Source: Octopus bimaculoides
Taxonomy: Eukaryota
NCBI RefSeq assembly: GCF_001194135.2
Contig: NC_068993.1
Location: 35,869,148-35,933,147, forward strand
Length of the DNA: 64,000 nucleotides
Direction: 5' to 3'
In this document: positions 30,974 to 31,199 of the stretch, in pieces
How the letters are laid out: each line of letters starts with the position of its first letter
How positions within the stretch are numbered: the first letter of the stretch is position 1
Made by a program: the position numbers and the translations under genes
The notes under the pieces: model-generated
Told to the model about the DNA's origin: nothing
What the model saw: only the letters and a program-made list of their open reading frames with translations
Databases searched by the model: none

Positions 30974-31199
30974 TATCTTTGTAGAAACGTATACATACTT
31001 TCTGCTATATATTCTCTCCCAAAAAAGCCGTTGTTGTTGCTGCTGCTGCTGTCGTTGTTCTTTTGCTGTTGTTGACAATGTTTAGGCCTAAACATTGTCA
31101 ACAACAGCAAAAGAACATCAACAGCAGCAGCAGCAACAACAACGGCTTTTTTTGGAGAGAATATATAGCAGAAAGTATGTATACGTTTCTACAAAGATA
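30974..31199. repeat. 226-bp spacer-less palindrome (113-bp arms, 3 mismatches)
   Basis: Base-by-base comparison. Centre AGG|CCT at 31086/31087. Mismatches only at 31020/31153, 31053/31120 and 31055/31118. Confidence 0.98.

What the first reader, a model, noticed from the sequence alone, without database searches (positions are those of the whole stretch)
30974..31199. 226-bp spacer-less near-perfect palindrome in otherwise unique DNA
Seen: two 113-bp arms join with no loop at AGG|CCT and differ at only 3 positions. The arms contain unique sequence plus a short (TTG)n(CTG)n block, are not part of any TE recognised here, and have no TSD. Established: spacer-less palindromes of this size are unstable, extrude cruciforms and are under-represented in genomes; transcribed, they form long dsRNA that Dicer or ADAR can use, and coleoid cephalopods edit RNA extensively. 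Inference: a hairpin-RNA/endo-siRNA locus, an editing hotspot (a plus-strand transcript would carry an A.C mismatch at 31120/31053), or a recent template-switch fold-back duplication. The 3 mismatches argue against a trivial read artefact but do not exclude one.
Basis: partly seen in the sequence, partly recalled or inferred. Interest (0 to 1): 0.75.

Follow-up and report, generated by a model that had tools for sequence, protein, structure and literature searches.

The report
Lone 226-bp near-perfect DNA palindrome
A genuine-looking 226-bp hairpin-forming palindrome sits alone in transposon-rich non-coding DNA of a gappy draft assembly; it is most likely a local fold-back copying accident, and nothing shows that it is transcribed, diced or edited.

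Summary
The arms are 30974-31086 and 31087-31199, 113 nt each, with no spacer and the centre at AGG|CCT. There are three mismatches (31020/31153, 31053/31120, 31055/31118). The edges are sharp, and chance expectation is about 1e-52 per 64 kb.

It is the only palindrome in the window that is not a (TA)n run, and the arm has no second copy there. At 97.3% it is the most similar repeat pair in the window; the next best pair is 89%.

The surrounding DNA is repeat-rich and non-coding. It holds about a dozen short interspersed copies, LINE and reverse-transcriptase fragments and two decayed mariners. I found no host gene. Twelve N gaps mark a short-read draft scaffold.

I could reach no independent copy of the locus and no relative of the arm. 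The organism was not identified.

My best reading (about 0.45) is a real, single-locus inverted duplication made by template switching at a short pre-existing palindrome, which has since diverged slightly or was copied imperfectly. The rivals are an assembly or library artefact, including a lost spacer (about 0.25), and a palindromic MITE with a hidden TA target-site duplication (about 0.2).

The hairpin-RNA, siRNA or editing-hotspot reading is structurally possible but has no support (about 0.06). Interest is low.

The parts
30974..31086 (+). Left arm of the palindrome (113 nt, 38% GC). It consists of a unique outer 46 nt, an A6 run, and a (TTG)3(CTG)4-type microsatellite block at about 31029-31075, and its inner end is ...GACAATGTTTAGG.
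31087..31199 (+). Right arm, the reverse complement of the left arm except at three positions. It carries the (CAG)n(CAA)n version of the microsatellite block.
31056..31117 (.). Perfectly self-complementary 62-bp core around the centre AGG|CCT (31084-31089, a StuI recognition site). A short palindrome here is the presumed seed for a template switch. In the predicted hairpin the apical loop is the 4 nt GGCC.
   Evidence: perfect stretches from outer end to centre: 46, 32, 1, 31 nt
31020..31020 (.). Mismatch 1, partner 31153. It is C opposite T on the + strand (C.U in + RNA, G.A in - RNA) and lies at the edge of a homopolymer run.
31053..31055 (.). Mismatches 2 and 3, partners 31120 and 31118. 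C31053 lies opposite A31120 (A.C in + RNA, G.U wobble in - RNA), and T31055 opposite T31118 (U.U in + RNA, A.A in - RNA). They are 2 nt apart inside the microsatellite block.
30974..30975 (.). Outer TA, mirrored by TA at 31198-31199. It is either the last base pairs of the palindrome or a hidden TA target-site duplication of a Tc1/mariner-type element spanning 30976-31197.
   Evidence: Read directly. No other direct repeat flanks the palindrome.

Best explanation
This is a real, single-locus inverted duplication of ordinary non-coding DNA. During replication or repair the growing strand reached a short natural palindrome (...TTTAGGCCTAAA...). It then switched template, copied about 110 nt of the sequence just made in reverse-complement, and returned to the original template. 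That leaves a spacer-less 226-bp palindrome with sharp edges. The three arm differences are either later point mutations or errors of the switch itself. At 2.7% divergence, later mutation would mean a few million years at typical neutral rates, unless gene conversion between the arms has slowed divergence. The locus has no demonstrated function. Shown here: the structure, its uniqueness in the window, the non-coding repeat-rich context, and the absence of any known RNA family. Inferred: the mechanism, the direction of copying, and that the palindrome is present in the animal's genome.
For: The reverse-complement copy lies directly next to its source, with 0 spacer and a self-complementary centre. 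The edges are sharp, with no further inverted homology in 510 nt and 2 kb of flank. No second copy of the arm or of its termini occurs in 64 kb. The arm carries the same kind of TTG-rich microsatellite, in the same orientation, as its immediate neighbourhood at 30541-30590 and 31776-31795 (family D6), as expected if local DNA was copied. The three substitutions mean the two arms are distinct sequences, not one path read twice. It is the only non-(TA)n palindrome in the window, so it is not a recurrent product of the assembler here. Template-switch mutations are documented to create perfect hairpin-forming inverted copies in one step, with events of 28 nt and up to 83 nt described (PMC10710096).
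Against: No outgroup or second assembly was available, so the ancestral empty state and the switch points are not demonstrated. At 113 nt the copy is longer than the template-switch events quoted in the paper read here. The arms are far more alike (97.3%) than any other repeat pair in the window (89% or less), which also fits an artefact or a very young mobile element. The window is a gappy draft scaffold (12 N runs) and no reads could be inspected. Long spacer-less palindromes are expected to be unstable (my own knowledge), which sits awkwardly with an age of millions of years.
Confidence: 0.45

Rival explanations
1. This is an assembly or library artefact. Either the junction AGG|CCT comes from fold-back chimeric reads or a gap-closing step, or a real inverted repeat has lost its spacer in the assembly. 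Under the first variant the two arm versions might be the two haplotypes of a single-copy segment.
For: The window is a short-read-style draft scaffold with 12 N runs of 10-829 nt and contigs of about 4.6 kb. The nearest gap (27 N) lies 510 bp to the left. The innermost 31 nt on each side are perfectly complementary, so nothing in the sequence itself proves that reads cross the centre. The 97.3% arm identity is an outlier against all other repeats, which are 89% or less. Library preparation is known to produce chimeric reads at inverted repeats and palindromes (PMC10908179; PMC3946424).
Against: A path retraced through the same reads would give identical arms, yet there are three substitutions spread over 32-67 nt from the centre. 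Left and right flanks are different unique sequences, so both arm-flank junctions must exist in reads. No other such palindrome occurs in the window, and no near-identical duplicates flank its gaps, so there is no sign of haplotype duplication. Chimeric reads are reported at low allele fraction (PMC10908179), so an assembler would not normally prefer them. Three heterozygous sites in 113 bp would be an unusually high local heterozygosity.
Confidence: 0.25
2. This is one copy of a palindromic miniature inverted-repeat transposable element (MITE) of the Tc1/mariner type. The element is 222 bp (30976-31197), consists almost wholly of its two terminal inverted repeats, and inserted at a TA that was duplicated.
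For: The size (222 bp), lack of coding capacity, AT-richness (38% GC) and full-length inverted repeat are typical of MITEs. The ends are flanked by TA...TA. Mariner-family elements are present in the window (HTH_48 and Transposase_1 hits). A published long-inverted-repeat catalogue excludes inverted repeats with arms under 400 nt, explicitly to remove short inverted repeats and potential MITEs (PMC8728187).
Against: There is no second copy or fragment in 64 kb, although the main short interspersed repeat has about a dozen copies there. The termini (TCTTTGTAGAAACG...) do not match the inverted repeats of the mariner copy at about 33130-34410. The TA is also explained simply as part of the palindrome. 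No relative of any arm-encoded peptide exists in 5.8 billion clustered proteins or 1.84 billion representative proteins. This is weak evidence, because the source species seems not to be covered.
Confidence: 0.2
3. This is a functional hairpin-RNA gene. The locus is transcribed, folds into a 111-bp duplex, and is then either diced into endogenous small RNAs or serves as an ADAR hyper-editing substrate, with the A.C mismatch at 31120/31053 as a favoured site.
For: Either strand would fold into an almost perfect 111-bp duplex. The + strand hairpin has an A.C mismatch, a context ADARs favour (my own knowledge). Hyper-editing of repeat-derived long dsRNA is general in metazoans, and octopus has exceptionally many recoding sites (PMC9989829). 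Template switching has been shown to give birth to miRNA genes (PMC10710096).
Against: There is no evidence of transcription and no gene, exon or known RNA family at or near the locus. The stem is far longer and the loop far shorter than the miRNA design of about 35 bp and 10 nt or more (PMC10710096). No potential target with similarity to the arm lies in the window. Canonical siRNA responses were not detected in the one mollusc tested by small-RNA sequencing (PMC6085071). Any transcribed inverted repeat would be edited, so editing alone would not make the locus special. The organism was not identified, so the cephalopod argument is unverified.
Confidence: 0.06

Closest known systems
Template-switch mutations that create hairpin-forming inverted copies (Ripley-type quasi-palindrome correction; Loytynoja/Monttinen work, PMC10710096)
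   Same: A reverse-complement copy lies directly beside its source and is made in one step. The base pairing is near perfect and the boundaries are sharp. It occurs at a single locus in otherwise unique DNA.
   Different: The copy is 113 nt, whereas the events described in the paper read here are 28 nt and up to 83 nt. There is no loop. No outgroup shows the before state.
Palindromic Tc1/mariner-derived MITEs (for example human MADE1, the source of the mir-548 family; named from my own knowledge)
   Same: It is a short, non-coding, almost fully palindromic unit with possible TA flanks, and mariner elements are present nearby.
   Different: No other copy was seen. The termini are unrelated to the mariner in the window. 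Multi-copy status is untested.
Drosophila-type hairpin RNA (hpRNA) endo-siRNA loci and long inverted repeats catalogued in LIRBase (PMC8728187)
   Same: It is an inverted repeat able to give a long intramolecular dsRNA.
   Different: LIRBase requires arms over 400 nt, and this one has 113 nt. No transcription, small RNAs or target are known. There is no loop.
Fold-back chimeric reads and palindromic library artefacts (PMC10908179, PMC3946424)
   Same: Head-to-head joining of a sequence to its own reverse complement at a short natural palindrome.
   Different: Such artefacts copy the same molecule, so they should give identical arms at low read fraction. Here the arms differ at three sites and the structure was accepted into the consensus.

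Membership tests
Template-switch (fold-back) inverted duplication | Reverse-complement copy adjacent to its source sequence | tested here: met
   Arms 30974-31086 and 31087-31199, 0 spacer, 110 of 113 positions paired
Template-switch (fold-back) inverted duplication | Ancestral or outgroup sequence lacks the copy, and the switch points are explained by a four-point model | not testable with these tools
   No orthologous locus was reachable
Template-switch (fold-back) inverted duplication | Single locus, not a dispersed repeat | tested here: inconclusive
   Unique within 64 kb; the genome-wide count is not available
MITE (Tc1/mariner type) | Terminal inverted repeats, small size, no coding capacity | tested here: met
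   222-226 bp, entirely inverted repeat; the ORFs across it have no Pfam or homologue hits
MITE (Tc1/mariner type) | TA target-site duplication | tested here: inconclusive
   TA...TA is present at the ends but is self-complementary, so it cannot be told apart from the palindrome itself
MITE (Tc1/mariner type) | Multiple dispersed copies | tested here: inconclusive
   No second copy in the window; the whole genome was not searchable
MITE (Tc1/mariner type) | Termini shared with an autonomous element | tested here: not met
   The mariner copy at about 33130-34410 has different inverted repeats, roughly GGTCGTTAAGCATGAAATTTGTAG
miRNA precursor | Match to a curated family at gathering score | tested here: not met
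   No Rfam hit at gathering score. The best sub-threshold hit is mir-3910 at 60 bits against a cut-off of 95, found on both strands, which is generic hairpin similarity.
miRNA precursor | Stem of about 35 bp with an apical loop of 10 nt or more (PMC10710096) | tested here: not met
   Predicted stem 111 bp, loop 4 nt
hpRNA / endo-siRNA locus | Long intramolecular dsRNA | tested here: met
   In silico only: -193 and -200 kcal/mol, z -26 and -30
hpRNA / endo-siRNA locus | Transcription and 21-24-nt small RNAs from both arms | not testable with these tools
   No expression data are available
ADAR hyper-editing substrate | A-to-G clusters in RNA relative to DNA | not testable with these tools
   No RNA-seq is available; only the A.C mismatch context is confirmed
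Assembly fold-back artefact | Arms identical because the same reads are traversed twice | tested here: not met
   Three substitutions between the arms
Assembly fold-back artefact | Recurrence elsewhere in the assembly or position at a gap | tested here: not met
   It is the only non-(TA)n palindrome of 25 nt or more in the window, and it lies 510 bp from the nearest N run. Closed gaps are invisible, so this is weak evidence.
Assembly fold-back artefact | No read spans the junction at normal depth | not testable with these tools
   No reads are available

The most novel reading that the evidence does not exclude
The palindrome is a young RNA gene in the making. A template switch created a perfect 111-bp hairpin in one step in a cephalopod genome. 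It is transcribed and feeds Dicer and/or ADAR. That would make it a lophotrochozoan example of de novo hairpin-RNA birth, with the A.C mismatch as a built-in editing site.
Probability: 0.05. Interest if true: 0.55.

Novelty: new member of a known kind. Interest (0 to 1): 0.2.

Why it matters
If real, it is one more example of how replication template switching seeds hairpin-capable DNA, the raw material for new small-RNA genes and editing substrates. It would also be a possible fragile site. If it is an artefact, it flags a local misassembly in a draft scaffold. Neither outcome changes current understanding. Only evidence of expression and processing would raise its value.

Tried and rejected
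1. Independent copies of the locus. Exact-protein look-ups of four ORFs lying on or within 1 kb of the palindrome were all 'not on record'.

2. Relatives of the arm or its flanks.
- The arm plus left-flank peptide found no candidate.
- A 1063-aa composite of 15 ORFs from 29.4-32.9 kb found no hit.
- The 71-aa frame spanning the palindrome, searched against 1.84 billion representatives, hit only a translated satellite, P0113, which is unrelated.

3. DNA scans. Two arm oligomers (24 and 26 nt) were absent from JGI metagenome contigs and from GTDB genome contigs. This was expected for animal DNA.

4. Organism identification. The LINE-tail ORF 7378-7800 has a best hit of only 74% identity, on unnamed ENA contigs. 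I fetched 60 kb from three such contigs. They share only that LINE, at about 75% nucleotide identity, and carry neither the window's short interspersed repeat nor the arm. They are therefore not close relatives, and the organism stays unidentified.

5. Known RNA families. There is nothing at gathering score, and the sub-threshold miRNA hits occur on both strands and reflect only hairpin shape.

6. A larger, decayed inverted repeat around the palindrome. Rejected.

7. Relation to the neighbouring mariner element. Rejected; the termini differ.

8. A parvovirus-like terminal hairpin or other viral end. Considered, but no viral or other coding domain lies in the flanks.

9. A putative pair of small exons at 31598-31759 and 31813-31958, with GT and AG boundaries. 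No Pfam hit or homologue supports them.

Full report
**What is there.** Window 30974-31199 is a 226-bp spacer-less palindrome. The two arms are 113 nt each, 30974-31086 and 31087-31199, and they meet at AGG|CCT. A base-by-base comparison finds exactly three non-complementary positions:
- C31020 opposite T31153;
- C31053 opposite A31120;
- T31055 opposite T31118.

From the outer end to the centre, the perfectly paired stretches are 46, 32, 1 and 31 nt. The central 62 bp is therefore a perfect palindrome. Complementarity stops abruptly at both ends. A gapped alignment of 510 nt of left flank against the reverse complement of 2 kb of right flank scores no better than shuffled sequence. The chance expectation of such a structure in 64 kb is about 10^-52. 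As single strands the region folds into a 111-bp stem with a 4-nt loop. Energies are RNA -192.7 (+ strand) and -199.6 kcal/mol (- strand), and DNA -125 kcal/mol, with z-scores of -26 to -33.

**How unusual it is locally.** A scan of every centre in the window, with spacers of 0-60 nt, finds no other palindrome of 25 nt or more except (TA)n runs. BLAST of the region against the window finds only CAG/CAA microsatellite matches. The arm's outer 23-mer and inner 18-mer occur nowhere else, even with three mismatches. A self-comparison of the whole window shows about a dozen copies of a 170-250-bp interspersed repeat at 72-89% identity and a few other old repeats. The palindrome's arms, at 97.3%, are by far the most similar pair.

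**Context.** The window is 35% GC and carries 12 N runs of 10-829 nt, so it is a draft scaffold of contigs of about 4.6 kb. The nearest gap, 30437-30463, lies 510 bp to the left of the palindrome. I scanned 150 stop-to-stop ORFs against Pfam. Only transposon domains hit: mariner HTH_48 and Transposase_1, rve and RVT_1. Nothing around the palindrome looks coding. A decayed mariner lies at about 33130-34410, and its terminal repeats do not resemble the palindrome's ends. Rfam finds nothing in the window at gathering score. At permissive thresholds the palindrome gives sub-threshold hits to several miRNA hairpin models on both strands. The best is mir-3910 at 60 bits against a cut-off of 95, which reflects shape and not membership. 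No tRNA-like sequences were found.

**Attempts to bring in outside evidence.** None succeeded.
- Four ORFs on or near the palindrome are not on record in the gene-position collection.
- Peptides from the arm, from a frame spanning the palindrome, and from 15 ORFs covering 29.4-32.9 kb have no relatives in the protein collections. The one hit is a translated satellite.
- Arm oligomers are absent from the metagenome and prokaryote genome collections.
- The LINE fragment at 7378-7800 finds only relatives of 74% identity or less, on unnamed ENA contigs. Sixty kilobases fetched from those contigs share nothing else with the window.

The microsatellite style, TE content, GC and contig size are compatible with a cephalopod draft genome, but that is only an impression.

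**Best explanation: a local template-switch duplication.** The anatomy is what a template switch produces. The copy is the reverse complement of the DNA immediately beside it. There is no spacer, and the centre is itself a short palindrome that could have primed the switch. The boundaries are sharp, and the locus is single-copy as far as can be seen. The arm's TTG-rich microsatellite has the same type and orientation as tracts 400-700 bp to either side (family D6), consistent with copying of local DNA. Template switching is documented to generate perfect hairpin-forming inverted copies in a single event (PMC10710096). The events quoted there are shorter, at 28 nt and up to 83 nt. The three substitutions give a Jukes-Cantor distance of 0.027. 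That corresponds to roughly 3-14 million years at assumed rates of 5e-9 to 1e-9 per site per year, unless the copying itself was error-prone or the arms are homogenised by conversion. I put this reading at about 0.45.

**Rivals.**
- *Artefact (about 0.25).* The assembly is a gappy draft, the arm identity is an outlier, and the inner 31 nt on each side are identical. The sequence alone therefore cannot prove that reads cross the centre, or that no spacer was dropped. Chimeric reads at inverted repeats and palindromes are a known product of library preparation (PMC10908179; PMC3946424). Against this, a retraced path gives identical arms, whereas these differ at three sites spread along the arm. 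The two flanks are different unique sequences. Nothing similar recurs in the window.
- *Palindromic MITE (about 0.2).* The size, composition and full-length inverted repeat fit. Mariners are present in the window. Against this, no second copy occurs in 64 kb and the termini are unrelated to the local mariner.
- *Functional hairpin RNA or editing hotspot (about 0.06).* This reading is structurally possible and nothing more. Any transcribed inverted repeat is expected to be hyper-edited in metazoans (PMC9989829). Canonical siRNA signatures were not found in the one mollusc tested (PMC6085071). The stem and loop geometry is not that of a miRNA (PMC10710096).

**Verdict.** The finding is a new instance of a known kind of structure and its interest is low. 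Read-level validation, a whole-genome copy count and expression data would settle it quickly. The central StuI site offers a simple bench check.

Noticed in passing
window 1304-1556, 6973-7197, 9957-10134, 11323-11573, 42216-42356, 56281-56513, 60724-61188, 62160-62734: There are about a dozen copies, in both orientations, of a 170-250-bp interspersed repeat at 72-89% mutual identity. In one frame it translates as '...RPRKDERQSR..NLNSE...'. It is probably a SINE. ARAGORN finds no tRNA-like head.
   Followed up: partly
window about 33130-34410 and 49928-50503: Two decayed mariner-family transposon copies (Pfam Transposase_1 and HTH_48) with stop-interrupted frames. The first has recognisable terminal repeats and runs close to the N gap at 34678.
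   Followed up: partly
window 7274-7917, 24864-28000, 55863-56670: Fragments of LINE or reverse-transcriptase elements (a YMDD motif at 24864-25139, and conserved C-terminal tails). The 7378-7800 tail has relatives at 74% amino-acid identity or less, on megabase-sized unnamed ENA contigs ERZ25066843 and ERZ25066847.
   Followed up: partly
window 13244-13561 and 40111-40413: An inverted pair of a 300-bp repeat at 88% identity, 26.5 kb apart. The first copy abuts the 625-nt N run. It is probably another dispersed element.
   Followed up: no
window 43179-43932: A 750-bp TA/TG-rich low-complexity tract that aligns to its own reverse complement at 68%. It is a microsatellite effect and not a structured palindrome.
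   Followed up: no
window 47441-47564 / 47787-47910 and 9240-9477 / 9679-9928: Two local direct duplications (86% and 78% identity) separated by about 200 bp.
   Followed up: no
window 31598-31759 and 31813-31958: Two open segments separated by 53 nt that starts AAG|GTAAAA and ends in a pyrimidine tract followed by AG, which looks like a small intron. No Pfam or homologue support was found, so it is probably a coincidence.
   Followed up: partly
window 4878-61123 (12 N runs): The N runs measure 10, 17, 27, 58, 66, 92, 145, 350, 625, 731, 791 and 829 nt, and most are bordered by (TA)n or (CA)n microsatellites. This is typical of size-estimated gaps in a short-read scaffold.
   Followed up: no
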